Program-made: the position numbers and the translations under genes
Virus record (IMG/VR): IMGVR_UViG_3300009537_002640
Location: 142,496 to 206,495 of that record
Reading direction: 5' to 3' (one strand)
Length of the DNA: 64,000 nt
Shown: piece after piece, positions 3,676 through 64,000 of the stretch
Layout: every line of letters starts with the position of its first letter
Position numbering within the stretch: position 1 is the first letter of the stretch
The notes under the pieces: generated by a model
What the model was told of the DNA's origin: nothing
Databases searched by the model: none
What the model saw: only the letters and a program-made list of their open reading frames with translations

Positions 3676-3683
3676 ATTCATAG

Positions 3684-17250: not shown

Positions 17251-17772
17251 CTAATCAGTTTCCATTAATTCCTCTTTCTTGTCTTTACGGTCCTTTCCAT
17301 CTATATCGTGATAGTCTAATAAACCATCAACATAATCTTCAGCCTTTGCAGGAGACTCGTCGCGCTTTTTATAATCCACCTGAGACTGAAATGCTTCCAT
17401 TTCTGTTTCTCTATCTAAATATTCTTTTTCCCCTTTATTAGGGTCAACATTGTCAGTGAATTGCTGAAGGAAGTGCACCAGTTCGTGCACCAGATAGTGA
17501 GTAGGATCCTGTCCCTTTTCTACTAGCTTCTTATTAATGTAAATCTTCTTGTCTTTAGTTTTTGCTGATACATCTAAATCAGCAAATTCTACAGGCACAT
17601 CATCTATCTTGGATAGCGGGACATTATACTTGTCAAATTTTTCTTTAACCTCAGGATCAGATTTTATCTTATCTTTCATCTTCTGAACCAGCTTGGTCCA
17701 ATCCGGTCCCGCCCTCTTCGAGATTCTGGTTATTGTCTGGTGTCTCTTCGACAGTTTGCGCATCTTTTTCAC
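17251..17772 (-). CDS. Zincin-like metallopeptidase (HExxH), 173 aa
   Basis: YLVHELVHFLQQ plus downstream ETEMEAF glutamate; GTG start, with an alternative ATG three codons later. Confidence 0.75.
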   Translation of the reverse strand: MKKMRKLSKRHQTITRISKRAGPDWTKLVQKMKDKIKSDPEVKEKFDKYNVPLSKIDDVPVEFADLDVSAKTKDKKIYINKKLVEKGQDPTHYLVHELVHFLQQFTDNVDPNKGEKEYLDRETEMEAFQSQVDYKKRDESPAKAEDYVDGLLDYHDIDGKDRKDKKEELMETD

Positions 17773-38934: not shown

Positions 38935-39960
38935 TTAGCCTGCTGCTACATCCTTACGGCCAACTGCTACACCACGTGGGTTGACAATACCGATTCCGAT
39001 ATTTTCGTTCACGACCCAACCTAGCTTGAGCTGCTTGGGCTCATCAGCTGGGAGAACTTCAATATCTTGACGGATTGGCATTACACCAACGAACTCAGGG
39101 TCAGCAACACCGAAGATAGTTCCAACAGGAACAATCTTAGAAACGATGATGTCTGCGCCCCAAAGGTGTGCAAAAAGACCAGTCTGTAGGATTTCACGCT
39201 GAGTGACCATATCTACCTCTCCACCAGTGCCAGCTGCCTGACCACCGCCAGAGCCCCAGTTTAGAATATCGTTGAACTCAACGATGTTCATTAGGAACTT
39301 GGTAGTTACTAGGTCCCAACGGTCTACCTGAACTTTAATCTCAGAGAGATCGCGCTTTAGAAGACCTGCATCCGCGATATCCTGTGCAGTATTCTCGCCA
39401 CCGAGAGAATCATCACCTGCGAAATCCAGAGCTGCGAAGATGTTGGCATCCTCTTGTGCCTGAATTTCCTGACGTGCTTTCTGCTGGGCACGGTCGATGA
39501 CGTTAAATCTACGACGCTTCACCTCAGAAATACGTACAGTTGGGTTTGAAACAATCTCAAACTCAGGGACTGTTACACGGTCTGCGAAGACACGAGACTC
39601 GGGTGCGGAGCCGTTGCTAGAAATAACAACTGCGCTCACATCGATATCACGGTCATACACAGGCAGTGCACCTTGTGGTAGGGGGTCTACGACTAGAACT
39701 CGACGACCGACGCCTTGGTAATCCAAGTTACGACGAATTGGGTTCGCCATAGCCTGACCAAGAGCAACCTTTCCTTCCTGAGTCATAAGAGCACGACGAA
39801 CTAGCTCGTCCTTCTGCTCCTCTGTGAAAGAAGGCTGACCAGCAAGATTCTGGTTAGCCGATTGGTTCTGCTGGATGATAGACGCAAACTTTACAATCTG
39901 CGCTAACGCATCACGACTATCAACTGCGTTCAACTCCCCATGTGTATTAAACATACTCAT
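38935..39960 (-). CDS. Major capsid protein (HK97-like fold), 341 aa
   Basis: Start refined to ATG 39960 (GGAGG RBS). PIRRNLDYQGVGRRVLVVDPLPQGA..., PEFEIVSNPTV, RRFNVIDRAQQKARQEIQAQED and C-terminal GWVVNENIGIGIVNP match large-phage MCP patterns; position after protease/scaffold and decoration genes; own terminator. Confidence 0.85.
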   Translation of the reverse strand: MSMFNTHGELNAVDSRDALAQIVKFASIIQQNQSANQNLAGQPSFTEEQKDELVRRALMTQEGKVALGQAMANPIRRNLDYQGVGRRVLVVDPLPQGALPVYDRDIDVSAVVISSNGSAPESRVFADRVTVPEFEIVSNPTVRISEVKRRRFNVIDRAQQKARQEIQAQEDANIFAALDFAGDDSLGGENTAQDIADAGLLKRDLSEIKVQVDRWDLVTTKFLMNIVEFNDILNWGSGGGQAAGTGGEVDMVTQREILQTGLFAHLWGADIIVSKIVPVGTIFGVADPEFVGVMPIRQDIEVLPADEPKQLKLGWVVNENIGIGIVNPRGVAVGRKDVAAG

Positions 39961-40114
39961 GAAAGTACCTCCAAAAATTAACCTACGGCTCTTCTGGTCG
40001 TATATTGGTCCGTCCCATAAGAGTCCATAGAGTATCAATTAGTTTTGATTTTCTTCGTCGGTATAACCGACAGGTGCACAACGAAGTCAAATCAGGTCTT
40101 ACAGAGAATCGAAA

Positions 40115-43089: not shown

Positions 43090-43698
43090 TTAGCTCCTTG
43101 GCCCCATATATCCTTGGGGACCATAATTTTTCGGGTCTAGCGATGGGTCTTTTGGAAGAAACTGAAAAGCACCAGCCATCTCTTCACCCTTCTCTCTGGC
43201 ACCCTCTTCATTTCCACTAGTAAACATATCGTAAATTTCGCCTATCTTGGTAAAGCCAAAAGCAAACAGTAGATACTTAGCTGCACGCCAAAGATTCTTT
43301 AGTAGTGCTCGTGGACTTATAACATATTTCCATATGAACTTAAGCACCACACTTGCGAACGCTTCCTTTACTATCTGGTTTTCCATAGAACTAGCGATTT
43401 TGTTTATTCGTTCATCGTTTAGGTTGGCTGTTGCTGGCATTCCAAAAAGCTGTGTAGTAACACCTTGTTCATCGAGCCATCTACCAAAGTCCTCTAACCC
43501 ATATCCGTAATTAGATAAAACTTTATCAAGGGCAGTTATCATCATTCCGCTCCAACCGAAAACAGATGGGGCGTATGATATCAATCTAAAAAGATTTTGC
43601 CCGGGGCCTTGATCGGTTCTCCACATACCTTGAACCATTTTCTTTATGCCTTCTGCAACAAATGCTCGTTTTGAAATATATCGCATAGCTTTGTCCAT
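43090..43698 (-). CDS. Putative ejection/internal protein with hydrophobic helices, about 202 aa
   Basis: Start refined to 43698 (TAATG coupling); ISKRA and IVKEA motifs; hydrophobic segments. Confidence 0.6.
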   Translation of the reverse strand: MDKAMRYISKRAFVAEGIKKMVQGMWRTDQGPGQNLFRLISYAPSVFGWSGMMITALDKVLSNYGYGLEDFGRWLDEQGVTTQLFGMPATANLNDERINKIASSMENQIVKEAFASVVLKFIWKYVISPRALLKNLWRAAKYLLFAFGFTKIGEIYDMFTSGNEEGAREKGEEMAGAFQFLPKDPSLDPKNYGPQGYMGPRS

Positions 43699-50760: not shown

Positions 50761-53700
50761 TTAGCGCCAATTAAGCTGTGCCAACTGCTCATTTAGGCTT
50801 GGGGCATTAACTGGTTCTGGACTTGCGGTAACAGTCATTGATTGACCGGCACCATCAGCTCCTACACGGGGTAGGGAACCGCCCTTCCTAGAATTGTAGT
50901 TAGCTACTACACGCTTATTTGACTCAAAAGCTGCGTCATCAAAGTTCATCAGCTGGTCAACGTATCCCTCAAGGGATGCCTGAGTAGAAGCGATTAGCCC
51001 CTTCTCCTGAGCCTGGAGACCTACTGCATACGCTCTGCGTAGCTTGGTCTTGTACTCTCCGTTGTCAGCTTCCTTCTTCTTAGAAGCAAACTCTTTGCTC
51101 AAGTCTGCACCGAAGCTACCAGTGTCAGGACCTTGTGCCCAGAACTTCTTCCAGTAAGAAGCTGCTGCTGAGTCAACCTTACCCTCAGCCACCAACCTAT
51201 CAACATCTTCAGCCTTGAGTGCGCCCTTAACAATTGCCTCTTGAATGAGAGCAGCTGCCTCACGCACATTTCTTGGGCCAGATTCAGCGACATCTCGCAT
51301 TACATCGTGAATCTCAGAAATGGTTTCAACATGAGCACCGTCTGTCTTGGTATGAGTTAGCTCAGTTGTAGTACCCTTTCCGCCTGGATGAGCCTCAAAG
51401 TACTCTTTCTGAGTTGCATTCTCTGCCTTGCCCAAATCCAACTCATACTTTCCAAGGATGTCACCTGCTTGAGCAAGAAGAGCATCACGCTCAGCCTTGC
51501 GAGCAGCCATTACAGAATCTAGAGCTTCGTCAACTGCGAAGTCACCATCATCTGCCATCATTGCCCCACCACATGACTCATCATGTGCATGGTCCTCGGC
51601 ACACATTGGTGCATCTGCATCATCCTCGTCTTTCTTCTTCTTTTTCTCATCCTTCTCATATTCATCTTCTTCATCCTCGTCGGACTCTTTATCCTTTGCG
51701 AGGTCAGGATGCGTAAGCTCGCCCTCTGGACCTTTTTCTTGCTTCTCTTCCTGCAGAAGCTTCATTAGAGAAGCCTCATCAGCATCAGTTAGAGCATAGT
51801 CCATCTCGTCGCCCATACCCATCATGTCCATATCACCCATAGCCTTAGCTAGAAGTGCAGCACGATTTTGAGCACGGACCCTTAGAGCTTGTTCTAGAAG
51901 TTCAGCAGCCTTCTTCTCGGCGTCAGACTTTTCGGACTTCTTATCTTCCTTCTCGTCCTCATCATCTTCATCCTCGTCTTTCTTCTTTTTCTTAGCTGCT
52001 TCTTTCTTCTTCTTATCCTCTTTGTCATCCTCATCTTTGTCTTTCTTGTCTGCCTTTTCGTCTTCCTTATCATCGTCTTTCTTCTTGGCAGCTTCTTTTT
52101 TCTTATCTTTCTTCTTCTTATCCTCTTTATCATCCTCATCTTCATCGTCGTCTTTCTTCTTCTTAGCCAAGACAACTTCAGCTTGAGCAAGTAGAGTCTC
52201 GCTGTCGGCTAGAGCTTGAACAGCTGCACTAAGAACACGGCCCTTAGTTTCACCATCAAGGTCTTCTGCCTTATCAAGAGCTTCGCTCACAAGAGCTAGC
52301 TCATCAGCAGACTCATCTAGGAGGGAGTGAACCTCCATAGCCTCATCGCGGAACGCTAGAGTTTGTTCCATTGGACTTTCGGAACCACCTTCGCCTTCCT
52401 CGTCGACCTTAACTTCAATGTCGACTAGTTTCTCACCACCCTCATCAACAGCCTTGCGGATGTCGTCTAGAGCAGTTTCAATCTTAGTGAGGCCAGCTTC
52501 TACCTTGCCCTTGAGATCAGGCTCATCTTCCTTCTTCTCTGGTGCAGGTGCTTCACCCTCAGGAGCTGCAGGAGCAGCTTCTGGTGCAGGTGCGTCTCCG
52601 CCTGGAGCTGGTGCTCCACCTGCTAGAGGGTCAGCTCCACCGGGAGCCAAAGGATCTTGAGCACCCTTTAGGAGATATGAAACCTCATCAAAGCCTTCGG
52701 TGCGGATATGGCGAATAATATCCTTTCCGTAGTCCTTGGAGCTTAGATAATCCCAGTTCTCATCAAGCTGGTCATCAAAGATTTCCTTGCCGGTTGCAGT
52801 TAGAATCAACTTGTCACCAGCATACACATCCCAACGGGATGCATCCTTGACTAGATTGCCTTGGTCATCAGCGACCTTGGTAAACTTTGCACGAAGGCGG
52901 GCACGCAACCACATCTTCTTTACTTTCTCGTCGCCAGGAACCATACCATCGGTACCGCCCATGTCGTAGATGCCTTGTAGGTGCTTATCTTCGTTATCGC
53001 GGATTTTGTCCGCTTCCTCTTTTGGATACTTTTCCTTGCCAGGGGTTGGCTCATTGATACCACCACCGCCTAGCCAGTAAGCGCGACGTCGTAGTCTACG
53101 CTCCTGTAGTTGAGCTTCAGTTAGCTTTCCATCTTCAGCTGCATCCTTGTCAGTCTTCTGAACCTGCTCTAGCAGTGCTTGACGGCGTAGTTTACGCTCC
53201 TCAATCTCTGCTTTCTTCTTGTCGGCTTTACCGCCGCCAAGATTGCGGGTTTCCCACGTTCTTCCTTCATCGCCTGGGTGAAGACCTTCGGATCCAGTTT
53301 CTAATGGCTCGCCAACCATTTGCTTATCTTCAGTGTCACGGATTTTATCCGCTTCTTCCTTCTCATACTTAGGCTTACCTGGAGTAGGCTCATTAATGCC
53401 GCCTCCACCTAGCCAATATGCTCGACGTGCTTTGGCACGGGCACGTAATCTCGCAGAATTCATATTGTCGTCCTCCTTAGAGACTGTTTTTAACTCATTG
53501 AATGATTTACTTAGTTTTTCTATCTTGGATCGAAGGAGACGTATTTCATTAAAAAGAACACCCAGGTTTCCGTCTCCCTCTAGACTAGCCAATCTCTGAC
53601 TAGGCTCGACTGATATTGGTGTAGTGGTAGTGCGATACGTACCTTCACCGTTGCCAGCCATTGGACTTACACTTGGCTCTGACCCACCACCAGTAGCTGG

Positions 53701-54789
53701 TAAAGCAGGAGGAGCCTCGTCTGTTTCAGTATTGCCGATGCCGAATTTGGCAGCTAATACCTCTTCGATTTTTTCTTTTAGAGCAGGGTTGGTTACAGCC
53801 TTCAATGCCGCGACCAATTCACCCATATCCATATTTTCTAGACCATGTATGGGTGAGCTTTTAGCCTCTACTCTTTTAGTCTTTTGTTCGAGTTTCATTA
53901 GCGTGTTAAGCTTAGTTTGCATTTCGTTGATGTTGTCAGCAAGCGCTTGTAGTTCAGTTGGGTTTACACAGGCACCAACTAGCAACTCGTCAATACGCTC
54001 TTGTTTTTGTTCAGCGTAATTCTGCAAGCTTGCGACTATTTGTCGGATTTTTGCCAGACCATCAGCGCCATTAACTACGAGGCTTAGCTCGATTGGGCTT
54101 AGGTCTAGGTTCACTTCGCCATAATTTGTGCGTCCACGAACATGATGACAATAGTCTCGTTCGGTTCTCGCTACATGGCCACATTCGGTGCATACGGAGC
54201 GACCGACTGCCGTACCCATTGATACGCAATTAGCATATCCGGTTTCTACTTTGCGTGCTAGGTCAGGGTAATTCTTCCTATCTAACGCAAATAAAGCATG
54301 AACCCTCTTAAACTTAGGGTCATAGTAAGTATCGATTATTATTCCACGAATGCCGTCTACGCTATCACTCTTGTGGTCTTTGCATAGTGGCTTTCCTACC
54401 CAGTTCTTGTAGGCTTTTAGCAGCTCATCTTCAGGAAAAATGTCACCATTAGCATTCTTGTAGGGCTTTAGTCCATCAGGAGATTCCCATTTCACAGAGT
54501 GCTCGTTGCCCTTTACCTTAATAGGCACGAAAGACCCCTTAGCTGGCTTACCATTAGAAGCTAGAACGGGCTCACCTGTATCCTGGTCTATCAAACATGC
54601 TTCAGCAGCATGCATCATAATAGCGTGGCCATAAAGAAAGTCACTAGCTCTTGGAGCAATCCTCTTTAGCTTCTTGGCTAACTTAACAAACCTTTTGGCG
54701 ATTTGTTCGTCCGCTAGAGCTTCTTTCGGTGTCATCAGATTTGTGTCTGGTGAAAAGCTTAGATTCTCTCCGATTTTCCTAATAGCCAT
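50761..54789 (-). CDS. Prohead (maturation) protease fused to a large scaffold region, 1342 aa
   Basis: N-terminal HK97/herpes-type protease signatures: NGDIFPEDEL, KPLCKDH (H139), VSMG (S190), CTECG..YCHH zinc site, IELSLV..GAD; then about 1000 aa of acidic, K/D/E-rich and coiled-coil sequence. Confidence 0.85.
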   Translation of the reverse strand: MAIRKIGENLSFSPDTNLMTPKEALADEQIAKRFVKLAKKLKRIAPRASDFLYGHAIMMHAAEACLIDQDTGEPVLASNGKPAKGSFVPIKVKGNEHSVKWESPDGLKPYKNANGDIFPEDELLKAYKNWVGKPLCKDHKSDSVDGIRGIIIDTYYDPKFKRVHALFALDRKNYPDLARKVETGYANCVSMGTAVGRSVCTECGHVARTERDYCHHVRGRTNYGEVNLDLSPIELSLVVNGADGLAKIRQIVASLQNYAEQKQERIDELLVGACVNPTELQALADNINEMQTKLNTLMKLEQKTKRVEAKSSPIHGLENMDMGELVAALKAVTNPALKEKIEEVLAAKFGIGNTETDEAPPALPATGGGSEPSVSPMAGNGEGTYRTTTTPISVEPSQRLASLEGDGNLGVLFNEIRLLRSKIEKLSKSFNELKTVSKEDDNMNSARLRARAKARRAYWLGGGGINEPTPGKPKYEKEEADKIRDTEDKQMVGEPLETGSEGLHPGDEGRTWETRNLGGGKADKKKAEIEERKLRRQALLEQVQKTDKDAAEDGKLTEAQLQERRLRRRAYWLGGGGINEPTPGKEKYPKEEADKIRDNEDKHLQGIYDMGGTDGMVPGDEKVKKMWLRARLRAKFTKVADDQGNLVKDASRWDVYAGDKLILTATGKEIFDDQLDENWDYLSSKDYGKDIIRHIRTEGFDEVSYLLKGAQDPLAPGGADPLAGGAPAPGGDAPAPEAAPAAPEGEAPAPEKKEDEPDLKGKVEAGLTKIETALDDIRKAVDEGGEKLVDIEVKVDEEGEGGSESPMEQTLAFRDEAMEVHSLLDESADELALVSEALDKAEDLDGETKGRVLSAAVQALADSETLLAQAEVVLAKKKKDDDEDEDDKEDKKKKDKKKEAAKKKDDDKEDEKADKKDKDEDDKEDKKKKEAAKKKKKDEDEDDEDEKEDKKSEKSDAEKKAAELLEQALRVRAQNRAALLAKAMGDMDMMGMGDEMDYALTDADEASLMKLLQEEKQEKGPEGELTHPDLAKDKESDEDEEDEYEKDEKKKKKDEDDADAPMCAEDHAHDESCGGAMMADDGDFAVDEALDSVMAARKAERDALLAQAGDILGKYELDLGKAENATQKEYFEAHPGGKGTTTELTHTKTDGAHVETISEIHDVMRDVAESGPRNVREAAALIQEAIVKGALKAEDVDRLVAEGKVDSAAASYWKKFWAQGPDTGSFGADLSKEFASKKKEADNGEYKTKLRRAYAVGLQAQEKGLIASTQASLEGYVDQLMNFDDAAFESNKRVVANYNSRKGGSLPRVGADGAGQSMTVTASPEPVNAPSLNEQLAQLNWR

Positions 54790-57184: not shown

Positions 57185-57553
57185 TTATTCCTTAGTTTCC
57201 GGTGTTAATCGTTTATCTCGTATATCTTTAGATACTTCTTTCCAGGCTGGCTGTAATACTATAATGTCGTGCTGGCCATTTTGTCTGATAGCCGCCACAA
57301 AGAAAAATGTCTTAGACTTTCTTATTTCCGCTTTTTCGCCAGAACGCAAAGTGAATCTAGTTAATGGCTCAGCATTAGCATAGTCCCAAGCCATTATCTC
57401 GTGTATATCTCTTTTTTTTAACCCTTGCATTTTAGGGTCGTTTGCAAATAGTCTTTGCCAATATTCACGCGCAGAACGGCTTACACCTACACCAGCACTG
57501 GTAGGGGTAAACACGCCGCATTTGTAAATATCGTGTCGAATAGATAACATCAT
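57185..57553 (-). CDS. Hypothetical protein, about 122 aa
   Basis: Start refined to 57553 (ATGA overlap). Confidence 0.5.
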   Translation of the reverse strand: MMLSIRHDIYKCGVFTPTSAGVGVSRSAREYWQRLFANDPKMQGLKKRDIHEIMAWDYANAEPLTRFTLRSGEKAEIRKSKTFFFVAAIRQNGQHDIIVLQPAWKEVSKDIRDKRLTPETKE

Positions 57554-58260
57554 TTTCCAACTAGTCGCAAAAATCTCTCTATCTTGTGTGATGGAATGCA
57601 TATCCCTAAATGGTCAAATGCTGTATGCCCCATGGAAAGTAGACCTATAACCTCTCCGCTATCATTGAATACAGGGCTACCGGAGTTTCCTCCTGCTGCC
57701 GCTGCCGATATGATAAGCCTATCTCGGATTAATGGAGTAACATCTTTTGACGGATTGATAACCACACCAGGCTCTTCATACATCATAAACCCCAATGGTG
57801 CGCCCACTAACATCACTTTGTCTTTTCGCTTCACTGTACTATAGTCAGCGAACTTAACAGGCTTTAGATTATGCTTTGGTAGTCTCATCAAACAAAGGTC
57901 GTTTGATTCATCCATCTCCAGCATCTCTACGCCGTTTCGTTGTATCTCTACATCTTCTAGTAGATACGTTAACTTGATATTGTCTTCTAGTATGTCCATT
58001 ACTTGAAGCTCAAATATAGCAACACAGACATGACCAGCTGTTATTAAATGGTCTTCATCATAAGCAAAAGCAGTTCCGTTGATCTCGTTAACACTTTTTC
58101 TCGCTTTTACTGAAACCATGCCCACTGAGCGGGCAAGGTTGGTTGGCAAATCCTCTCTTCTAGCTTCCTCTTGCTGAGTAACTACTACTGGCTCGGGAGC
58201 ATGTACATTTATAGAACACCCCGTAAGCATTAACACTAGTAGCACAAAGATGCGTTTCAT
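57550..58260 (-). CDS. Lipoprotein trypsin-fold (S1/HtrA-like) serine protease, 236 aa
   Basis: MKRIFVLLVLMLTG-C lipobox signal; TAGH, DLCL and GNSGSP catalytic triad motifs; no PDZ domain. Confidence 0.88.
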   Translation of the reverse strand: MKRIFVLLVLMLTGCSINVHAPEPVVVTQQEEARREDLPTNLARSVGMVSVKARKSVNEINGTAFAYDEDHLITAGHVCVAIFELQVMDILEDNIKLTYLLEDVEIQRNGVEMLEMDESNDLCLMRLPKHNLKPVKFADYSTVKRKDKVMLVGAPLGFMMYEEPGVVINPSKDVTPLIRDRLIISAAAAGGNSGSPVFNDSGEVIGLLSMGHTAFDHLGICIPSHKIERFLRLVGK

Positions 58261-58886
58261 TCGTCTGAGGAACGCTCTTTGGTTTTTGCCATTGTATCTA
58301 ACATGTCATCAAACTGACTAGCTAGTTTGGTGTCTCCTTGCTCATCTAAAAAGCTTGCAATTGAAACCAGGTCCTCTGGTTGCATCCTTAAGCCTACTCG
58401 CTGAGCCAGGTCAGCCACTACTTCATCAATAGCCCTGGCCTCGTCATAAAGACCATCCTTATCTAGCTTGTAAGCAACTTTGAATAATTTAGCTAACATG
58501 GAATCCCTCCTTAAACTAGATTCTTTTTCTAACTCCTTCTGAAGCTCAATTTCCTTCTTCAGCAAGAATGATAGACGTTTTGCCTCTTCTTCTGTTATAT
58601 CATCTCTTTCCTTTAGGCGATGTATGTTCTCTGCAACCTCATCGAGTTGCTTTCGTGTTCGTTCTTTGGATGCCTTCTTTTCTGGAACTCGGTCCCGTTT
58701 AGATATTTGCTTTCTTTTCTTTTCAGTGAGATTATGAAACCATATATCTCCTATAGTGGCAGCTATCTGTTCCTCAGAGTACTCAGGAGAGTTTTTCTTT
58801 ATCTCCTTTTTCATCTTATCAAACCACTTCTTAGGTGGGCGTTGTTTCTTTTGAGATTTTTCTTTTGCAATTACCCGTTGAGTCAT
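58257..58886 (-). CDS. Basic helical protein with two hairpin tags, about 209 aa
   Basis: Start refined to 58886 (AAGGAG RBS); LFKVAYKLDKDGLYDEARAIDEVV and LVSIASFLDEQGDTKLASQFDDML. Confidence 0.65.
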   Translation of the reverse strand: MTQRVIAKEKSQKKQRPPKKWFDKMKKEIKKNSPEYSEEQIAATIGDIWFHNLTEKKRKQISKRDRVPEKKASKERTRKQLDEVAENIHRLKERDDITEEEAKRLSFLLKKEIELQKELEKESSLRRDSMLAKLFKVAYKLDKDGLYDEARAIDEVVADLAQRVGLRMQPEDLVSIASFLDEQGDTKLASQFDDMLDTMAKTKERSSDE

Positions 58887-58897
58887 TTGAAAGCTCC

Positions 58898-59218
58898 TTA
58901 TACAATATCTCGTGTCTTTCCGTTTCGTGGACGGCCATAGTGAACAGTAGAGGTGGTGCTGTCGCTTAGGCGGAAGCCAGAACCTACTTCCCAAAACATT
59001 TTGACAAAATCTTCGCTTATGTAAAACTCATTACCTTTATCGTTCCTAAGCTTTAGAATACCACAGTCTTCATCGTAATCTATAGGGGTAGCGATAACGA
59101 TTGTGTAGGACTGTGCATCACCATCAGCATAAGATAGCCACTCAGAATCCAGGTCGATAAAAAGCTCTAACTTCTTGTTAAGAAAGTTAGTAGCTATGAA
59201 TTTGCCATTTTTTGCCAT
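58898..59218 (-). CDS. Small beta-rich hypothetical protein (possible Sm-like barrel), 106 aa
   Basis: GAGG RBS; beta-strand pattern only, fold call tentative. Confidence 0.55.
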   Translation of the reverse strand: MAKNGKFIATNFLNKKLELFIDLDSEWLSYADGDAQSYTIVIATPIDYDEDCGILKLRNDKGNEFYISEDFVKMFWEVGSGFRLSDSTTSTVHYGRPRNGKTRDIV

Positions 59219-59230
59219 TTTAATCCTCTA

Positions 59231-59629
59231 TTAAGTATTGTATCGGGCTTTTCCACGAGTACCAACATATTTTAGTCGTATATGTCTATTGGACGCATCA
59301 ACTTCCCAAATTGCCGCATAAGCTGATCTTCCGCCTGTTAAATGACAATGAAAGAGTCCAGAAGATAATAGTTTACTAAAGTTAGGCCATTTATACAGGT
59401 ATGGACTTTTTTTCAGATCCGTAATAAGATTATGTGCAGTTTCTTGAATCCGCTTGGGCAATTTCGAAATCCCCTTTAATACTGACTTCGGAATATCCAC
59501 AGTCCATTCTTTTGCAGTTTCTGGGTCGGAAGAGTATGAAATTAATATCTCATCTATTTGATCAGCAATATCATAATATCCTAGTTTGTCTAGTCTATTA
59601 GCCACATTGCACAGTGTTTTCAAAAACAT
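59231..59629 (-). CDS. RelE/ParE-superfamily toxin-like domain with N-terminal hairpin tag, 132 aa
   Basis: WTVDIPKSVLKGISKLPKRIQ...FSKL...FHCHLTGG..YAAIWEV...IRLKYVGTRGKARY matches a RelE-like pattern; GGAGG RBS. Confidence 0.7.
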   Translation of the reverse strand: MFLKTLCNVANRLDKLGYYDIADQIDEILISYSSDPETAKEWTVDIPKSVLKGISKLPKRIQETAHNLITDLKKSPYLYKWPNFSKLLSSGLFHCHLTGGRSAYAAIWEVDASNRHIRLKYVGTRGKARYNT

Positions 59630-62600
59630 TATTCCCCTCCATTTCCCTGTATAGCTCTAGTCGTCCCGCTCGTTTTGACAAAGCTTTTGGTTTAGAGCTG
59701 GCAAATCTAGAATCCCTTTTGAGTTTAGCAACAGAATCATAAAACATTACCATCTCGTATGGAACGTCCAGTACGTTTCTATTATCCTCTATTCGTATGC
59801 TCTTATGTGGAGGCATCTTTTCAAGAACATTCTGTATTGTCTTCAAGTAGCTGTCTGAAAGTGCACCAGGAACATCAAAGGTAGAAAACATATCCATTTT
59901 AGCAACCCTCATCCAACCCTTAGATAATGCATCCTCATAAGTAGGTTCTTCGTCCGGACCAAAGTAACCAAAAAACTCTGGATGGTCCTTTATAAAGAGT
60001 ATATGTCCATTAGGCGCATCATAGAGCTTGCCATCCGGAGAAAACCACCAGGCATTGTAATCTGCTCGCTTAGATAGTGATTTCTTACCAAATGGAATAC
60101 GCTTCTTATTTCCACAGCTCCATACTTGAACATGGTTAGCTGTCCAAGAACCACTTGGTACTTCGCCATCGAACTTCTCTTTAGGTGGTTCCATGTATTC
60201 AAGTGTCACGTGAGGTTTGTAGGATGGAAAATGATCATCAACCTCTACGCCTGCTTCAATCAAAGCTTTTTTCAGTGCCTTGTGCAACTTATGTAACTCT
60301 TTGGACACCACAGCCATCTTAGCAATCTTACAATTATCAGAATGCTTGGTTGCAGGAAAGTAAGTCGGCTTCTTATCTAGTTCTAACTTTATAGGGCTAA
60401 AGTCCTTGATAACATCACGTACCACGCCATACACAGTCTCCTGCTTTTTCTCAGGCACATCTCCTATGTACAATACTGTTACATGAGTGGCGCTATCGTC
60501 GTGTTCGCCTAAAGAGGGAAATTGCTTAGACATGTCTTTTGGCAGAAGTATAAACACACCAGCACCATGTTTTCTGTCCTTTTTCTTCTCGTCTCTTTTA
60601 GAAAGCTTCTTTACGCCATCCCTAATTGATAGTGATTTCTTGCTTACCATTTCCTCTGCCCACTCTGGCAGTTCAAGCTCCATCTTATTAGGGTCTTTTA
60701 TGTTGCGTGCATTATTGGCGCTCTCTATGTAGTCAGGATAGTCCTTGTCCAAACCTAAGTCAAAGAAGGAATCAGGGTTGGTATCTACTAATTGAACTAT
60801 TGCGCCGCGACCAAGCTCAGGGAACTTATGATGTAAGTGATAGTAGAAGAATGCACGTGCATCTTGCTGAGACAAAGCCTCAGCTGCAGCTTCTAGTAAC
60901 TCCTTAAACTCATCTTCTTCGCGCTCATGATACTTGAATACAAAATAGAACTTGGCATTGTCCTCTAACATGTTTTTCAATGCAAGAGCCTCTTCCTCTG
61001 GGCATTCTTTATGTAGCCCGCGATAGAAGAATGCATCAGGGTCGTTCTCTGCTAATTGTTTAGCTTCGTTGTCGCTAACATCGTGAATATCGTGCTCTGG
61101 CTCTTCCTCGTCTCTGTGTCTAAAGATAGGAGCCTTCTCAAACCAGTCACCCATCTCATCATCTTCGCCATGACCCATGTCTTCGTCATTAAGCTCATTG
61201 TTGATTTCAAATATAAGGTCTGGCACAGTTTGATTGTGTGCTATTTTGAAAGCATCAGCAAACTTGCTAACTATTTCATTAGGCACACCAGATGCCACCA
61301 TGTCTTCATACAGATACGGAGCTATGGTTATTTGGTCATAGTACTCTGGCTCTGCATAAGCTCTACCCAAATACCTCTGCTTGGCACTCGTTAAAGCCTG
61401 TGGGTCGAACTTAGCTTCGTATATGTTGACATGAACAGCATTATTTACCGGCTCAATTTTAGCCGTCATTCTCACCGGGACATCTTTGTCTCCTGACAAT
61501 ACCTTTACCGCTCTAGCTATAGCATTTAGGTCTGCTCCAGAAACATCAAATGCTGTTCCCTTAAGGTGTGCTGGATGTTTCTCTGGCACTTTAGGCGGGC
61601 CAACTATGTAGCGAAATTGCTTAGTCAGAATCCTGGCCTTTTGTGCAGGGTCAGTTACAGTAGGGTAGTATATGTTAGCACGATATCTTTTCCACGCATT
61701 TTCAATGATTTTAGTCTGGTCTTCTAGTGTGCGAGAGCCAGAAGTTAAACGTGCCCCAGGTGGTAAAAATGGGCTTAGCATTGCCCATGCACTTAGTATA
61801 GTTTCATTAATCTTAGCCCTAGGAGAAATATTTAGTGCTTTCCTCTGATCCTCAGATAACTGCACTCCTCCCTCCTCTTTAGGAACAACACTTACAGATG
61901 GAGAAAGTTTCTCTTTCATTTCCCTAACTCTCTCTGTATGCTGCTCGGTTAGCGCCCTAACAGATAGTGATTGGCGCTTAACCATACGAGGCTGTTGTTT
62001 TTGATAAAGAGCGGCAACGAAATCTTTCATAGGAGGCATGACAACACTGCTGCCCAAAACTACATGAATAGCGTTATTGGCTGGCTCCACCAAAGAGCTT
62101 ATAACCTGAATAGAGCCAGGGAACGCTGCAGCAACCTCCATAAGGGTCTTATTAATGGCCCTAAGATTACTTCCAGTAATATCAAATGCTACACCTTCCT
62201 GATGTTCAGACTCGCCAACGAAAGCTATATCTGGTACCTGTACACCCTTAGGAGACTTATTCCTAATATAGCTTACCATTTGATTGAGGCGCCTCTTCTC
62301 TCTGCGATTAAAATCCTTGTCGTTTACGGCCTTCCAATACATTACTCTCAACTCTTGGTCTGTTATCCCAAGCTCTTTAGAGAAAGTAGTATGATAGACA
62401 CCCTGGTTTCGCTTCCACTCGCCAGGCTTACCAGCGTAACTTCTCCAGTACTCCAAAACTATCTTGGCCTGTTCACCTGCGCCACGATAAGCACTACTAA
62501 GGTATGTATTGTTTGGCATAAACGGAGCTATTATTCTCCATGCGCGTTCAATGCTTGGGGTTAACGTCGCGGACTCGTACACATTAGTGACGTTTTTATT

Positions 62601-63470
62601 AACGTCTACCAGTTGTGCATAGTTCTCCCATCGAGACGGGTCAGTTACCGGCGCGTTTACATCTACAGGTGGAGTAGGAGTATGCTTAATGGTGCTTACA
62701 GGAAGCTCTTCTTCCTCCATATATGATTGCGCTCGTATGCTAAAAGCCTTCTTTTCCTTTTTCTCTTCTTTACCTTCGTGCTTTTCTACAAGTTCAGGGT
62801 CAAGATACTGATTCTTGAGAGTAGAGGCTTTGTGACCAACTATATCTGCCACCTCCTCTAGTGCCTCTTTAAAATCCTTCTTCTTTAACATTTCCTTCAT
62901 AAGACGATTGGCGTGAAACCCTCGCAAATCTTTAGCGCTGATATCAAATGGTTTCAGATATCTATTAACGGCACGATCCCAAATCTTCTTACCATCGATT
63001 TCAAATATGAAGTCATCAGCCTTTTTACCCTTCATAAGGTCTCTGATAGCCTTAATAACCTCATTATTTTCAAGCACAACGTTTTGTTCCACTTCACCTT
63101 TTCCAGGAAAATCAAAAGTCATTTTCCCTGAGCCGCCCTTAACGTGCTTTACTTTAAGAGTAGATGCTCCGTAGGTTCCTTCACGAGCAGATTCCTCATT
63201 ACCAATGCGCATAGCTGTCTCATCCATAATTCCAACTATGGCTGCAATAGCTTTGGTTCGTTCATCATCGGACTTTAGGTCTTCGCGATACTGCTTACGC
63301 ACCTTATCAAGCTCTTTTTCCAACTTCTTGAGCTTATCTTTCTTCTCTTCCCAGCGCTTTTCAACATGCTTCTCGTCGTATACCCACACGTATCCCTTAT
63401 CGGTCTTCTTCTTTTCCTTGTAAGCCGGTTTGTCAGAGGTAACTTTTGCTCGTTTACTTAGCAGGTTCAT
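59598..63470 (-). CDS. Polyvalent polyprotein: DNA topoisomerase IB + two M15 Zn-peptidases + 4 helical repeats + 2H phosphoesterase + C-terminal domain, 1290 aa
   Basis: TopIB R88, K124, K180/R183, H213, Y222; M15 motifs S[AG]xR..H..G.AFD..H twice (H423/D430/H469 and H635/D642/H680); HVT996-998 and HVT1087-1089. Confidence 0.85.
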   Translation of the reverse strand: MNLLSKRAKVTSDKPAYKEKKKTDKGYVWVYDEKHVEKRWEEKKDKLKKLEKELDKVRKQYREDLKSDDERTKAIAAIVGIMDETAMRIGNEESAREGTYGASTLKVKHVKGGSGKMTFDFPGKGEVEQNVVLENNEVIKAIRDLMKGKKADDFIFEIDGKKIWDRAVNRYLKPFDISAKDLRGFHANRLMKEMLKKKDFKEALEEVADIVGHKASTLKNQYLDPELVEKHEGKEEKKEKKAFSIRAQSYMEEEELPVSTIKHTPTPPVDVNAPVTDPSRWENYAQLVDVNKNVTNVYESATLTPSIERAWRIIAPFMPNNTYLSSAYRGAGEQAKIVLEYWRSYAGKPGEWKRNQGVYHTTFSKELGITDQELRVMYWKAVNDKDFNRREKRRLNQMVSYIRNKSPKGVQVPDIAFVGESEHQEGVAFDITGSNLRAINKTLMEVAAAFPGSIQVISSLVEPANNAIHVVLGSSVVMPPMKDFVAALYQKQQPRMVKRQSLSVRALTEQHTERVREMKEKLSPSVSVVPKEEGGVQLSEDQRKALNISPRAKINETILSAWAMLSPFLPPGARLTSGSRTLEDQTKIIENAWKRYRANIYYPTVTDPAQKARILTKQFRYIVGPPKVPEKHPAHLKGTAFDVSGADLNAIARAVKVLSGDKDVPVRMTAKIEPVNNAVHVNIYEAKFDPQALTSAKQRYLGRAYAEPEYYDQITIAPYLYEDMVASGVPNEIVSKFADAFKIAHNQTVPDLIFEINNELNDEDMGHGEDDEMGDWFEKAPIFRHRDEEEPEHDIHDVSDNEAKQLAENDPDAFFYRGLHKECPEEEALALKNMLEDNAKFYFVFKYHEREEDEFKELLEAAAEALSQQDARAFFYYHLHHKFPELGRGAIVQLVDTNPDSFFDLGLDKDYPDYIESANNARNIKDPNKMELELPEWAEEMVSKKSLSIRDGVKKLSKRDEKKKDRKHGAGVFILLPKDMSKQFPSLGEHDDSATHVTVLYIGDVPEKKQETVYGVVRDVIKDFSPIKLELDKKPTYFPATKHSDNCKIAKMAVVSKELHKLHKALKKALIEAGVEVDDHFPSYKPHVTLEYMEPPKEKFDGEVPSGSWTANHVQVWSCGNKKRIPFGKKSLSKRADYNAWWFSPDGKLYDAPNGHILFIKDHPEFFGYFGPDEEPTYEDALSKGWMRVAKMDMFSTFDVPGALSDSYLKTIQNVLEKMPPHKSIRIEDNRNVLDVPYEMVMFYDSVAKLKRDSRFASSKPKALSKRAGRLELYREMEGNNVFENTVQCG

Positions 63471-63753
63471 TAATGTTCTCCGGGTCTAAGTTGCGTACGT
63501 ATCGTTTGTTTCTTGTCATCCAATCTAATAGTTTGCCCAGGTTTCTAATTACAACTCTTCTGTGCCATGTGGGCTCCATAGTGCAAAGTGTATCGTATAT
63601 ATGTCGTGCTGTCTTAATAACCTCATCAGCGTGCGAAGGACTAGAGTGCTTTTTGGCAATATCGAACTCTATTTTGAGTGTTCGCATAGCTTTATTGATA
63701 GTGTGAGTATTCTCGTAGTCCAAGAATATGTTCATTTTTGCCAGCATATTCAT
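63454..63753 (-). CDS. Hypothetical helical protein, 99 aa
   Basis: Intact ORF, AAGGG RBS. Confidence 0.5.
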   Translation of the reverse strand: MNMLAKMNIFLDYENTHTINKAMRTLKIEFDIAKKHSSPSHADEVIKTARHIYDTLCTMEPTWHRRVVIRNLGKLLDWMTRNKRYVRNLDPENINEPAK

Positions 63754-63763
63754 GAGCTAACCC

Positions 63764-64000
63764 TTATACTGGTGGAGGACCACCAGCTCCTCCGCCACCT
63801 AGACCACCGCCACCTGGTGGAGGGCCACCCATGCCTCCGCCTGAACCGCCTCCTGGGCCTCCCATAGGTGGCATTGGCGGACCACCGCCTCCACCACCAC
63901 CTAATGGTGGTGGGCCACCCATACCGCCACCAGGACCGCCCATTCCACCTGGGCCTCCTGGCATTGCTCCAGGAATACCAGACTCTTCGGCTCCTGGAGT
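63764..64000 (-). CDS. Partial CDS (runs off right edge): Gly/Pro/Met low-complexity C-terminus
   Basis: Frame open from 64000 (TPGAEESGIPGAMPGGPGGMGGP...GGPPPV*); identity of the upstream domain unknown. Confidence 0.6.
   Translation of the reverse strand, partial: TPGAEESGIPGAMPGGPGGMGGPGGGMGGPPPLGGGGGGGPPMPPMGGPGGGSGGGMGGPPPGGGGLGGGGAGGPPPV

What the first reader, a model, noticed from the sequence alone, without database searches (positions are those of the whole stretch)
60087..60569. 2H phosphoesterase module that could be a pre-packaged anti-CBASS enzyme
Seen: two intact HxT motifs (THVTVLY, PHVTLEY) flanked by LSKRD and LSKRA linkers. Established: T4 Acb1 is a 2H phosphoesterase that destroys CBASS cyclic oligonucleotides; other 2H enzymes (ThpR/LigT) act on RNA 2',3'-cyclic phosphates. 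Inference: injection as a processed protein would neutralise nucleotide second messengers before phage gene expression.
Basis: partly seen in the sequence, partly recalled or inferred. Interest (0 to 1): 0.65.

Follow-up and report, generated by a model that had tools for sequence, protein, structure and literature searches.

The report
Virion polyprotein's 2H phosphoesterase cassette
The flagged stretch is a real, intact 2H phosphoesterase module cut out of a large multi-enzyme protein that a phage-G-like giant phage probably packs into its head, but it resembles RNA-end-repair enzymes (ThpR/LigT) more than the anti-CBASS enzyme Acb1, and in sister phages its most frequent fusion partner is a tRNA CCA-adding enzyme.

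Summary
Residues 961-1136 of a 1290-aa ORF (window 59598-63470) form a 2H phosphoesterase. Both HxT motifs are intact and invariant in 23 homologues. The module is bracketed by LSKRD and LSKRA.

The ORF is a polyvalent polyprotein: Topo IB, two VanY/M15-like peptidases, an acidic module, the 2H module and an unknown module. It sits in the head-gene block of a phage-G-like megaphage fragment, directly after the portal gene. The pentapeptide [LIF]S-x-R-[AD] occurs 8 times in it (0.09 expected). It marks module borders in relatives too, with varying codons, so it is probably a maturation-protease site.

- Structure: CPDase/ThpR-type enzymes score Z 14.8-17.0, Acb1 scores 9.6.
- Pfam: the Acb1 model scores 21.4 bits against a cut-off of 27, whereas PF13563 scores 44.7.
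- Context: in 24 non-redundant related loci the 2H module is fused to a CCA-adding enzyme in 11. LigD 3'-phosphoesterase is fused in several relatives.

My best reading is a pre-packaged polynucleotide 3'-end-healing enzyme, probably for tRNA. Degradation of a signalling nucleotide remains possible (about 25%). 2H domains in injected polyvalent proteins were already predicted in 2017. The conserved border motif and the 2H/CCA/Topo IB set are not mentioned in the papers I searched.

The parts
59598..63470 (-). Gene for the 1290-aa polyvalent polyprotein P0001 that contains the finding
   Evidence: ORF list and translation. Pfam Topoisom_I and 2_5_RNA_ligase2. Homologous 800-2600-aa multi-module proteins.
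63447..63461 (-). N-terminal LSKRA (residues 4-8), a possible targeting or cleavage peptide
   Evidence: The same N-terminal motif occurs in P0002 and P0013 and in the polyvalent ORFs of L007 and L008.
62745..63350 (-). Type IB topoisomerase catalytic module (residues 41-242)
   Evidence: Pfam PF01028 at E 7.5e-31. PDB sequence hits to type IB topoisomerases, best 6z01 at E 5e-18.
62730..62744 (-). Linker FSIRA (residues 243-247)
   Evidence: It lies immediately after the Topo IB module.
61968..62729 (-). VanY/M15-like peptidase module, copy 1 (residues 248-501)
   Evidence: Weak Pfam VanY hit. In alignment A2 the R..Q, H-x6-D and H positions are invariant.
61953..61967 (-). Linker LSVRA (residues 502-506)
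61371..61952 (-). VanY/M15-like peptidase module, copy 2 (residues 507-700)
   Evidence: AlphaFold pLDDT 91. The best PDB matches are VanYB, VanXYc, LdcB and the T5 L-Ala-D-Glu peptidase, at probability up to 0.99 but TM about 0.44.
60633..61370 (-). Acidic, helical module of unknown role (residues 701-946), conserved in relatives
   Evidence: BLAST against P0002, P0003, P0006, P0008 and P0009 at 57-73% identity.
60591..60632 (-). Double linker LSIRD-GVKK-LSKRD (residues 947-960) upstream of the 2H module
   Evidence: [LI]SKRA-type motifs flank the N-side of the 2H module in most relatives.
60078..60590 (-). 2H phosphoesterase module (residues 961-1131), the finding itself
   Evidence: Pfam, NCBIfam, alignment A1, model, fold searches.
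60477..60485 (-). First catalytic H-x-T (H996, T998)
   Evidence: Invariant in A1.
60204..60212 (-). Second catalytic H-x-T (H1087, T1089)
   Evidence: Invariant in A1.
60063..60077 (-). Linker LSKRA (residues 1132-1136) downstream of the 2H module
   Evidence: The C-flank motif is conserved in relatives.
59682..60062 (-). Module E of unknown function (residues 1137-1263)
   Evidence: It recurs in P0004, P0011, P0013, P0014, P0016 and L007. In P0004 and P0013 it is bracketed by LSKRA. No family or Atlas hit.
59667..59681 (-). Last linker LSKRA (residues 1264-1268), followed by a 22-aa tail
63764..64000 (-). Gly/Pro-rich C-terminal end of the portal gene (cut by the contig end)
   Evidence: Its homologue L037:1843-3858 matches portal phrog_16240 at E 4.5e-61.
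63454..63753 (-). 99-aa ORF between portal and polyprotein, conserved in L037
50761..54789 (-). 1342-aa protein with a prohead (head maturation) protease domain at residues 112-221. Candidate enzyme for the linker cuts.
   Evidence: phrog_18299 at E 1.3e-15. Homologous domains lie a few kb downstream of the 2H gene in L007, L016, L019, L022, L025, L028 and L030.
38935..40038 (-). Major head protein, 53.5% identical to Bacillus phage G gp27
   Evidence: phrog_2522 at E 1.2e-78. tblastn.

Best explanation
Residues 961-1136 of the 1290-aa minus-strand protein are a catalytically intact LigT/ThpR-like 2H phosphoesterase. They form one cassette of a 'polyvalent' polyprotein of a phage-G-like megaphage.

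How I think it works:
1. The polyprotein is made late and loaded into the prohead. Its gene follows the portal gene.
2. It is cut at the repeated [LI]S-x-R-[AD] borders, most likely by the prohead protease encoded about 5 kb downstream. This frees a 2H enzyme of roughly 170 aa.
3. The pieces leave the capsid with the DNA.
4. In the cell the 2H enzyme most likely opens 2',3'-cyclic phosphate (or related 3'-blocked) ends on RNA, above all on tRNAs cut by host metal-independent RNase defences. The ends can then be rebuilt by a CCA-adding enzyme and a 3'-phosphoesterase. Those activities are cassettes of the same polyprotein family in sister phages. In this phage they would have to come from the host or from the missing part of the genome.

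Shown: the domain identity, the intact and conserved active site, the fold ranking, the motif statistics, and the gene order and fusions.

Inferred: packaging, cleavage, ejection and the substrate.
For: Domain and active site:
- PF13563 at 44.7 bits and PF02834 at 27.0 bits, both above their cut-offs.
- H37, T39, H128 and T130 are invariant in 23 homologues.

Fold ranking:
- 5h7e RNA 2',3'-cyclic phosphodiesterase scores Z 17.0 over 165 aligned residues. 1iuh scores 15.9, YjcG 15.8 and E. coli ThpR 14.8. Acb1 (7t26) scores 9.6 (Foldseek).
- The only PDB sequence hit is 5h7e.
- The nearest NCBIfam model is thpR, TIGR02258.

Partners:
- Of the 19 longer relatives from the protein search, 7 carry the CCA-adding enzyme domain PF01743 and 4 carry the LigD 3'-phosphoesterase PF13298. 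In P0004 and P0014 the LigD domain lies directly after the 2H module.
- In 24 non-redundant IMG/VR loci, a CCA-adding enzyme is in the same ORF as the 2H module in 11 and within 10 kb in 13. This holds from 55% down to about 35% identity of the 2H module.

Packaging context:
- The major head protein and tail sheath lie on the same strand. The major head protein is 53.5% identical to phage G gp27.
- In the close relative L037 the order is TerL, portal, 97-aa ORF, polyprotein. The window keeps the portal tail and the small ORF.
- The polyprotein carries VanY/M15-like wall-peptidase modules.

Border motif:
- 8 observed against 0.086 expected in P0001, and 4 against 0.06 in neighbouring ORFs.
- The two polyvalent ORFs of L007 carry 7 and 6 copies, L008 carries 6 and L010 carries 5. 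They lie at module borders; in L008 the sites at 251, 742 and 918 lie right after Topo IB and on both sides of the 2H module.
- Codons differ between sites, so selection acts on the peptide.
Against: - No experiment and no virion proteome exists for this uncultured phage.
- This contig (206 kb, about 25% complete by CheckV's estimate) has no CCA-adding enzyme, no LigD phosphoesterase and no RNA ligase, and no tRNA genes. The repair partners are therefore absent here.
- Polyvalent proteins by definition mix unrelated activities, so fusion is weaker evidence than in ordinary proteins.
- The module is not a ThpR equivalog: 37.5 bits against a cut-off of 65.7.
- At the sequence level T4 Acb1 and E. 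coli ThpR score alike against the family profile (36.8 and 36.0).
- The second motif context (F-P-x-Y-K-P-H-V-T-L-E-Y) looks more like Acb1 (FDDYTPHITLSY) than like ThpR, which has Arg rather than Tyr after HxTL.
- 18 of the 23 family members give sub-threshold Acb1 hits.
- The major head protein and the protease-bearing protein contain no [LI]S-x-R-[AD] motif, so the cutting enzyme is not identified.
Confidence: 0.45

Rival explanations
1. The released 2H enzyme degrades host immune nucleotides (CBASS cyclic di- or trinucleotides, type III CRISPR cyclic oligoadenylates, or 2'-5'-linked signals) as soon as the DNA enters, as Acb1 or the viral 2',5'-phosphodiesterases do.
For: - Acb1 is a 2H enzyme using the same HxT/HxT tetrad (PMC9117128).
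- The Pfam Acb1 model gives sub-threshold hits in 18 of 23 family members, best E 1.3e-6.
- The motif-2 context matches T4 Acb1.
- Viral 2'-5' phosphodiesterases (VP3, NS2) and AKAP18 score Z 12-13.
- Iyer et al. 2017 proposed this role for polyvalent-protein 2H domains, and found no association with RNA ligases.
- No ligase or CCA-adding enzyme is present on this contig.
Against: - Acb1 (Z 9.6), the penguinpox cGAMP PDE (9.4) and the BCSR5 PDE (9.7) rank below 38 entries of CPDase, ThpR, Usb1 or AKAP type.
- The Pfam Acb1 score is below its cut-off and covers only one lobe.
- Persistent fusion with a CCA-adding enzyme and LigD 3'-phosphoesterase is not explained by signal degradation.
- Phage G, a phage whose major head protein is related, is reported to carry a separate stand-alone Acb1-like gene that was not detected in its virion proteome (PMC12484599).
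Confidence: 0.25
2. The module is an offensive or trimming RNase of the Usb1 type. It would remove 3' nucleotides from host RNAs, or aberrant 3' extensions from tRNAs, leaving cyclic-phosphate ends. This could shut off the host or prepare tRNA ends for the CCA-adding enzyme.
For: - Human Usb1 scores Z 14.4-14.6 over 158 aligned residues.
- Iyer et al. 2017 favoured an RNase role for 2H domains fused to MuF or portal domains.
- The pairing with a CCA-adding enzyme is also compatible with a trim-then-rebuild scheme.
Against: - Identity to Usb1 is only 6-8%.
- The bacterial CPDase-type entries score higher.
- Nothing here tests for nuclease activity.
Confidence: 0.1
3. The module heals DNA rather than RNA. 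It would clear 2',3'-cyclic phosphate or 3'-blocked nicks in the incoming giant genome, for example those made by the co-packaged type IB topoisomerase at embedded ribonucleotides. It would work with the LigD-type 3'-phosphoesterase and a ligase.
For: - Topo IB lies in the same ORF or within the fetched locus (up to 10 kb either side) in 15 of 24 non-redundant loci and in the same polyprotein here.
- LigD 3'-phosphoesterase modules are fused in several relatives.
- An ATP-dependent DNA-ligase-like gene lies near the P0006 polyprotein.
- From established enzymology: type IB topoisomerases can leave 2',3'-cyclic phosphates at ribonucleotides.
Against: - The CCA-adding enzyme, an RNA enzyme, is the most frequent direct fusion partner.
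- No evidence exists for ribonucleotides or nicks in this genome.
Confidence: 0.08
4. The protein is not packaged or cut. It is simply a large late-expressed cytoplasmic multi-enzyme, and the repeated pentapeptide is a structural or docking linker rather than a cleavage site.
For: - No proteomic data exist.
- The major head protein and the protease-bearing protein lack the motif.
- The nearby conserved S1 protease is an exported lipoprotein and so cannot process proheads.
Against: - The gene sits directly after the portal gene, the position of minor head proteins such as Mu F and SPP1 gp7.
- The polyprotein carries wall-peptidase-like modules.
- The motif also occurs at the extreme N-terminus of several relatives, and near the N-terminus or at a domain border in four neighbouring ORFs of the window.
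- Stand-alone 2H proteins begin where the motif would cut (P0021, P0022).
Confidence: 0.12

Closest known systems
2H phosphoesterase domains of phage 'polyvalent proteins' (Iyer, Burroughs, Anand, de Souza and Aravind 2017, J Bacteriol; PMC5512222)
   Same: A 2H domain embedded in a very large multi-enzyme protein encoded among virion genes, predicted to be injected with the DNA. Proposed roles are RNase or degrader of defence nucleotides.
   Different: - Here the partners are Topo IB, VanY/M15-like peptidases, a CCA-adding enzyme and a LigD 3'-phosphoesterase. A term search of that paper finds no 'CCA-adding' and no 'LigD', and finds 'topoisomerase' only in its reference list. 'tRNA nucleotidyltransferase' also does not occur in it.
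- Here the modules are delimited by a conserved pentapeptide rather than relying on a metallopeptidase domain inside the polyprotein.
ThpR/LigT-type RNA 2',3'-cyclic phosphodiesterases (E. coli ThpR 4qak/5ldi, D. radiodurans CPDase 5h7e, T. thermophilus TT0787, B. subtilis YjcG)
   Same: - The best structural matches, at Z 14.8-17.0 over 147-165 residues.
- Both HxT motifs align.
- PF02834 scores above its cut-off.
   Different: - 14-19% identity.
- Below the thpR equivalog cut-off (37.5 against 65.7 bits).
- Tyr instead of Arg after the second HxTL.
- A family-specific F-P-S-L-G-E-x-D-x-S loop precedes the first HxT.
- Part of a polyprotein rather than a free cellular enzyme.
Acb1 anti-CBASS nuclease (T4 gp57B; Erwinia phage FBB1, 7t26/7t27)
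   Same: - A phage 2H enzyme with an HxT/HxT tetrad.
- A similar motif-2 context.
- Aromatic residues at the positions of Y12, W74 and F107 (F14, F79 and F122 here).
   Different: - Z is only 9.6 over 130 residues.
- Pfam PF23474 scores below its cut-off and covers one lobe only.
- Acb1 is a compact stand-alone protein of about 150 aa with a C-terminal lid. No such lid is evident here.
- The same aromatic positions are also aromatic in ThpR, so they do not discriminate.
Capsid-internal, protease-processed ejection proteins (T4 internal proteins with an N-terminal targeting peptide; phiKZ/SPN3US ejection proteins cut by the prohead protease; PMC10052503, PMC7411985)
   Same: A short repeated recognition peptide, also found at the very N-terminus. 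The genes lie in the head block, and a prohead protease gene lies nearby.
   Different: - The motif here is [LI]-S-K-R-[AD]. From my own knowledge, not checked here, T4 uses L/I-x-E and phiKZ uses S/A/G-x-E.
- One polypeptide yields five or six different enzymes.
- Cleavage has not been demonstrated.
Phage tRNA repair (T4 Pnkp plus Rnl1/Rnl2; CCA-adding enzymes of jumbo phages; Iyer et al. 2021, PMC7824862)
   Same: The logic is the same: heal cyclic-phosphate ends left by host tRNases, then restore the tRNA.
   Different: - No kinase and no ligase is present in this polyprotein.
- The enzymes would be delivered ready-made in the virion rather than expressed early.

Membership tests
2H phosphoesterase superfamily | Two H-x-T/S motifs, one in each lobe | tested here: met
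   H996-V-T998 and H1087-V-T1089. Invariant in 23 homologues.
2H phosphoesterase superfamily | Bilobed alpha+beta 2H fold | tested here: met
   Model pLDDT 89.6. 68 PDB chains score Z 8 or more, and all of the listed entries at that level are 2H enzymes.
2H phosphoesterase superfamily | Pfam clan member scoring above its gathering threshold | tested here: met
   PF13563 at 44.7 bits (cut-off 27). PF02834 at 27.0 bits (cut-off 23.3) for the module alone. All 23 family members hit PF13563.
ThpR/LigT RNA 2',3'-cyclic phosphodiesterase (equivalog) | NCBIfam TIGR02258 score at or above its cut-off | tested here: not met
   37.5 bits against a cut-off of 65.7. It is the best NCBIfam hit but is sub-threshold.
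ThpR/LigT RNA 2',3'-cyclic phosphodiesterase (equivalog) | Closest structural neighbours are CPDase/ThpR enzymes | tested here: met
   5h7e Z 17.0, 1iuh 15.9, 2d4g 15.8, 5ldm/4qak 14.8.
ThpR/LigT RNA 2',3'-cyclic phosphodiesterase (equivalog) | Basic residue after the second motif (H-x-T-x-x-R) | tested here: not met
   The family has H-V-T-L-E-Y, where E. coli ThpR has H-I-T-L-L-R.
ThpR/LigT RNA 2',3'-cyclic phosphodiesterase (equivalog) | Hydrolysis of RNA 2',3'-cyclic phosphate ends | not testable with these tools
   Needs an enzyme assay.
Acb1 anti-CBASS nuclease | Pfam PF23474 at or above its gathering threshold over most of the profile | tested here: not met
   21.4 bits against a cut-off of 27, covering profile positions 76-112 of 144 only. 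18.9 bits in the genome scan.
Acb1 anti-CBASS nuclease | Acb1 structures are the nearest structural neighbours | tested here: not met
   7t26 scores Z 9.6 and 7t27 scores 9.2, at ranks 40 and 43, below the CPDase, ThpR, Usb1, AKAP18 and VP3 entries. BFVD Acb1 entries rank 36 and 46, with TM 0.51 and 0.46.
Acb1 anti-CBASS nuclease | Aromatic base-stacking residues (Y12, W74, F107) and a C-terminal lid | tested here: inconclusive
   F14, F79 and F122 occupy the aligned positions, but ThpR is also aromatic at these positions. The lid could not be assessed.
Acb1 anti-CBASS nuclease | Cleavage of 3'3'-cGAMP or cyclic trinucleotides, and rescue from CBASS | not testable with these tools
   Needs biochemistry and phage assays.
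Phage polyvalent protein (Iyer et al. 2017) | Several domains with disparate biochemical activities in one polypeptide | tested here: met
   Topo IB, two VanY/M15-like modules, a 2H module and two unknown modules.
Phage polyvalent protein (Iyer et al. 2017) | Encoded among virion or late genes | tested here: met
   The portal tail and a small ORF lie upstream. The prohead protease domain, major head protein and tail sheath lie downstream on the same strand.
Phage polyvalent protein (Iyer et al. 2017) | Packaged in the virion and injected | not testable with these tools
   Needs the virion proteome of a cultured relative.
Prohead-protease-processed capsid cargo | Recurrent short recognition motif at module borders and N-termini | tested here: met
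   8 against 0.086 expected in P0001. Border positions in L007, L008, L010, P0004 and P0013. Synonymous codon variation between sites.
Prohead-protease-processed capsid cargo | Actual cleavage at the motif by the phage protease | not testable with these tools
   Needs mass spectrometry or co-expression.

The most novel reading that the evidence does not exclude
Phage-G-like megaphages carry in the capsid a ready-made nucleic-acid end-repair kit. It would be built from interchangeable enzyme cassettes (2H phosphoesterase, CCA-adding enzyme with HD domain, LigD-type 3'-phosphoesterase, Topo IB, wall peptidases). Each cassette is bounded by the same pentapeptide [LI]SKR[AD]. A head protease would cut at these borders, so that one gene yields five or six free enzymes that enter the cell with the DNA. 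They would undo tRNA or RNA cleavage by host defences before any phage gene is expressed. The 2H module in this window would be the cyclic-phosphate-opening step of that kit.
Probability: 0.3. Interest if true: 0.7.

Novelty: new variant of a known kind. Interest (0 to 1): 0.5.

Why it matters
If the cassettes are cut out and injected, this would be a phage polyprotein strategy. A single late gene would supply a set of free enzymes at time zero of infection, and cassettes could be swapped between phages at a conserved border peptide.

A virion-delivered 2H enzyme, with a CCA-adding enzyme in sister phages, would mean that phages can counter tRNA-cutting defences (PrrC, RloC, retron/PtuAB, PARIS, HEPN RNases) before they express any gene. 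If the substrate proves instead to be a signalling nucleotide, it would be a second, ThpR-like lineage of anti-signal 2H nucleases, delivered pre-made.

Either way the module is small (about 170 aa), has clear catalytic residues and can be tested directly. The border motif also gives a practical rule for dissecting these giant proteins.

Tried and rejected
- Plus-strand reading of the given coordinates: stops throughout.
- Near-identical DNA in GenBank phages: none. Protein-level hits in phages were only Rctr197k for the 2H module and a few Topo IB hits.
- Repair partners or a second 2H/Acb1 gene on the 206-kb contig: no PF01743, PF13298 or PF09414. The only PF23474 signal is the module itself. 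No tRNA genes. The contig is a fragment, so absence proves little.
- The trypsin/HtrA-like protease (window 57550-58260) as the linker-cutting enzyme. It was attractive because P1 would be Arg and the gene is conserved next to the polyprotein in P0002 and P0004. I set it aside because it carries a conserved lipoprotein signal (LTGC here, LAGC in L037), so it should be exported. It is also absent from the IMG/VR loci.
- The pentapeptide as a DNA repeat or recombination site: rejected, because Leu, Ser and Arg codons differ between sites.
- hhalign of the family profile against single T4 Acb1 and E. coli ThpR sequences: scores 36.8 and 36.0, not discriminating.
- PDB sequence search for the M15-like module: the top hits are spurious epimerase matches. 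Motif conservation and the fold search were more informative.
- ESM Atlas for module E: nothing.
- Not run: the large profile search (search of protein representatives), because the family scans had already placed the domain. Read mapping and complex prediction were also not run, as neither was needed for the claim.


Full report
**1. Observation.**

The plus strand of 60087-60569 has no open frame. The minus strand carries a 1290-aa ORF, window 59598-63470 (P0001).

The two motifs are present as described (positions):
- THVTVLY contains H996 and T998, window 60477-60485.
- PHVTLEY contains H1087 and T1089, window 60204-60212.
- The flanks are LSKRD (residues 956-960) and LSKRA (residues 1132-1136).

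The module alone scores 44.7 bits on Pfam PF13563 (cut-off 27) and 27.0 bits on PF02834 LigT_PEase (cut-off 23.3). In an alignment of 23 homologous modules both His and both Thr are invariant. So are G12, F14, P18, D32, F79, D86 and W158 in module numbering. This is the pattern of an active enzyme under selection.

**2. The protein around it.**

P0001 is a chain of modules:
- a type IB topoisomerase core, residues 41-242 (PF01028 at E 7.5e-31; PDB 6z01 at E 5e-18);
- two VanY/M15-like peptidase modules, residues 248-506 and 507-700. They keep invariant R..Q, H-x6-D and H positions. The AlphaFold model has pLDDT 91. The best PDB matches are VanYB, VanXYc, LdcB and the T5 L-Ala-D-Glu peptidase, at probability up to 0.99 but TM of only about 0.44, so support is moderate;
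- an acidic helical module, residues 701-946;
- the 2H module;
- an unknown module E, residues 1137-1263.

Between the modules stands the pentapeptide [LIF]S-x-R-[AD]. It occurs at residues 4, 243, 502, 548, 947, 956, 1132 and 1264. That is eight copies against 0.086 in 20,000 shuffles. The strict form [LI]SKR[AD] occurs four more times in other ORFs of the window, against 0.06 expected. One of these lies just before the peptidoglycan-binding-like part of the 549-aa ORF 43698-45347. Codon usage differs from site to site, so the peptide is conserved, not a DNA repeat.

**3. The genome.**

The window is the last 64 kb of a 206,495-bp IMG/VR virus contig that CheckV estimates at about 25% complete. 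Its major head protein (38935-40038) is 53.5% identical to gp27 of Bacillus phage G. A tail sheath gene and an ORF with a prohead-protease domain (50761-54789, residues 112-221) lie on the same strand.

In the close relative L037 (polyprotein P0002; 85% identity in the 2H module) the gene order is large terminase, portal, 97-aa ORF, polyprotein. The window keeps the Gly/Pro-rich portal tail at 63764-64000 and the small ORF at 63454-63753. From general knowledge of Mu F and SPP1 gp7, minor head proteins occupy this position after the portal gene.

Together with the wall-peptidase-like modules, this fits the 'polyvalent protein' class that Iyer et al. 2017 predicted to be packaged and injected (PMC5512222). 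Packaging itself is inferred, not shown.

**4. Relatives.**

The word-based protein search found 19 further proteins of 823-1955 aa that hold this 2H module, and only 3 short ones. Among the 19 longer relatives:
- 6 carry Topo IB;
- 7 carry the CCA-adding enzyme domain PF01743, in two cases with an HD domain;
- 4 carry the LigD 3'-phosphoesterase PF13298, which in P0004 and P0014 lies directly after the 2H module;
- single proteins carry ART-PolyVal, Fic, or NUDIX with a UvrD helicase.

A scan of IMG/VR gave 31 loci, which form 24 clusters at 90% identity. In those 24:
- the CCA-adding enzyme is in the same ORF as the 2H module in 11, and within 10 kb in 13;
- Topo IB is in the locus in 15;
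- a prohead-protease domain is seen downstream in 6 and a major head protein in 5, where the contigs reach that far.

The 2H-CCA pairing persists from about 55% down to about 35% identity of the 2H module.

The border motif is conserved in the nearer clade. The two polyvalent ORFs of L007 have 7 and 6 copies, L008 has 6 and L010 has 5. In L008 the sites lie at residues 10, 251, 742, 918, 1479 and 2202. They fall right after Topo IB (49-244), on both sides of the 2H module (748-912), and ahead of the CCA module (1515-). Module E moves between proteins; in P0004 and P0013 it carries the motif at both ends. The more distant clade has a different conserved lead-in ([TV]AKATG.KTG) before the 2H module.

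**5. Acb1 or ThpR?**

The AlphaFold model of the module has pLDDT 89.6.

| Structure | Z |
|---|---|
| D. radiodurans RNA 2',3'-cyclic phosphodiesterase, 5h7e | 17.0 (165 residues aligned) |
| T. thermophilus TT0787 | 15.9 |
| B. subtilis YjcG | 15.8 |
| E. coli LigT/ThpR | 14.8 |
| Human Usb1 | 14.4-14.6 |
| AKAP18 | about 13 |
| Rotavirus VP3 | 12.5-12.8 |
| Burkholderia phage BCSR5 PDE | 9.7 |
| Acb1, 7t26 | 9.6 (130 residues aligned) |
| Penguinpox cGAMP PDE | 9.4 |

Foldseek gives the same order. In the viral library, annotated Acb1 entries rank 36 and 46.

By sequence:
- 5h7e is the only PDB hit.
- thpR (TIGR02258) is the best NCBIfam model, but below its equivalog cut-off.
- Pfam Acb1 scores 21.4 bits (below 27) and covers only the second-motif lobe.

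Two things point the other way:
- Profile-to-sequence comparisons give similar scores, 36.8 for T4 Acb1 and 36.0 for E. coli ThpR.
- The second-motif context F-P-x-Y-K-P-H-V-T-L-E-Y resembles Acb1's FDDYTPHITLSY more than ThpR's, which has Arg after HxTL. 18 of the 23 family members give sub-threshold Acb1 hits.

The aromatic residues that stack on the bases in Acb1 (Y12, W74, F107; PMC9117128) have aromatic counterparts here, but ThpR has them too. The module is therefore a distinct 2H clade. It is nearest in fold to the CPDase/ThpR group and is not a member of the Acb1 family.

**6. Mechanism.**

The most economical reading has four steps:
1. The polyprotein is loaded into the prohead.
2. 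It is cut at the pentapeptide borders. The prohead protease is the obvious candidate. The one motif-bearing relative whose flank reaches the protease gene, L007, has a protease domain very similar to the window's (E 5e-70). Motif-less loci have distant ones (E 1e-8 to 1e-13). That is a single data point.
3. The freed modules leave with the DNA.
4. From the established chemistry of 2H enzymes, the free 2H enzyme would open 2',3'-cyclic phosphates left by metal-independent RNases. LigD-type phosphoesterases clear 3' phosphates, and CCA-adding enzymes need a 3'-OH. The recurring 2H / LigD phosphoesterase / CCA set therefore reads as a 3'-end healing and rebuilding line for tRNA.

I put this at about 0.45. 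It is no higher because this contig has neither a CCA-adding enzyme nor a LigD phosphoesterase nor a ligase, and because polyvalent proteins do mix unrelated activities.

The rivals are:
- a Usb1-like RNase, at about 0.1;
- healing of DNA nicks alongside Topo IB, at about 0.08;
- independently of the substrate, a roughly 0.12 chance that the protein is not cut or packaged at all.

**7. Novelty.**

2H domains in injected polyvalent proteins, and both candidate roles, are already in the literature (PMC5512222; PMC7824862). A virion protein that blocks CBASS by another route has been reported in a preprint (10.1101/2025.07.23.666291).

I did not find the following in the papers searched:
- the conserved [LI]SKR[AD] border that delimits shuffled cassettes;
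- the 2H / CCA-adding / Topo IB / LigD-phosphoesterase set in the head module of phage-G-like megaphages. The 2017 paper holds none of the terms 'CCA-adding', 'tRNA nucleotidyltransferase' or 'LigD', and holds 'topoisomerase' only in its reference list.

I therefore rate the finding a new variant of a known kind, of moderate interest.

**8. Limits.**

Everything about packaging, cleavage, ejection and substrate is inference. The phage is uncultured and the contig is partial. The large profile search and a superfamily tree were not run.

Noticed in passing
window 57550-58260 (-): A 236-aa HtrA/trypsin-like S1 serine protease (PF13365 at 57 bits) with a lipoprotein signal (MKRIFVLLVLMLTGC). The same gene, with a lipobox, follows the polyprotein in the close relative L037, and a Trypsin_2 gene follows P0004's polyprotein. 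It is absent from the IMG/VR loci. An exported phage protease kept next to the head genes is unexplained.
   Followed up: partly
window 62745-63350 (-), and loci L007-L030: A eukaryotic/poxvirus-type topoisomerase IB core is a cassette of the presumed virion polyprotein. It is found in the same ORF or the same locus as the 2H module in 15 of 24 non-redundant related loci. A capsid-carried Topo IB in giant phages, as in poxvirus virions, would be notable in its own right.
   Followed up: partly
window 59682-60062 (-): Module E (residues 1137-1263) has no family, PDB-sequence or Atlas match. It recurs in at least six other polyvalent proteins; in P0004 and P0013 it carries LSKRA at both ends.
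   Followed up: partly
window 43698-45347 (-): A 549-aa ORF with an Ala/Gly-rich hydrophobic stretch near the N-terminus and a single LSKRA at residue 320. A weak peptidoglycan-binding or endolysin-like region follows (PF01471, phrog_1512). It is probably another processed ejection or wall-penetration protein.
   Followed up: no
window 17251-17772, 43090-43773 and 58257-58994 (all -): Three further small ORFs each carry one ISKR[AD], at residues 17, 33 and 97. This is the pattern expected for removable N-terminal propeptides cut by the same protease.
   Followed up: no
window 5801-17236 (-): A 3811-aa ORF. Its only hit is a weak match to the endosialidase tail-spike catalytic domain. The 963-aa ORF 27412-30303 has the same match. 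They are probably giant fibre or spike proteins.
   Followed up: no
window 50761-54789 (-): The prohead-protease domain (residues 112-221) sits in a 1342-aa protein with a Cys-rich, zinc-ribbon-like insert. The remaining 1100 or so residues have no match. That is unusually large for a head maturation protease.
   Followed up: no
window 63764-64000 (-), and L037:1843-3858: The portal protein ends in a Gly/Pro-rich low-complexity tail of about 80 aa, conserved between the window and L037.
   Followed up: no
whole contig G000 (206,495 bp): ARAGORN finds no tRNA genes, although the phage has a phage-G-like head protein. CheckV's 25% completeness estimate suggests a genome of several hundred kb.
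   Followed up: no
P0015 (823 aa) and L024 (ORF 3670-5091): Some relatives carry two tandem 2H modules in one protein, and P0015 also has a Fic domain. Duplication of the module hints at diversified substrates.
   Followed up: no
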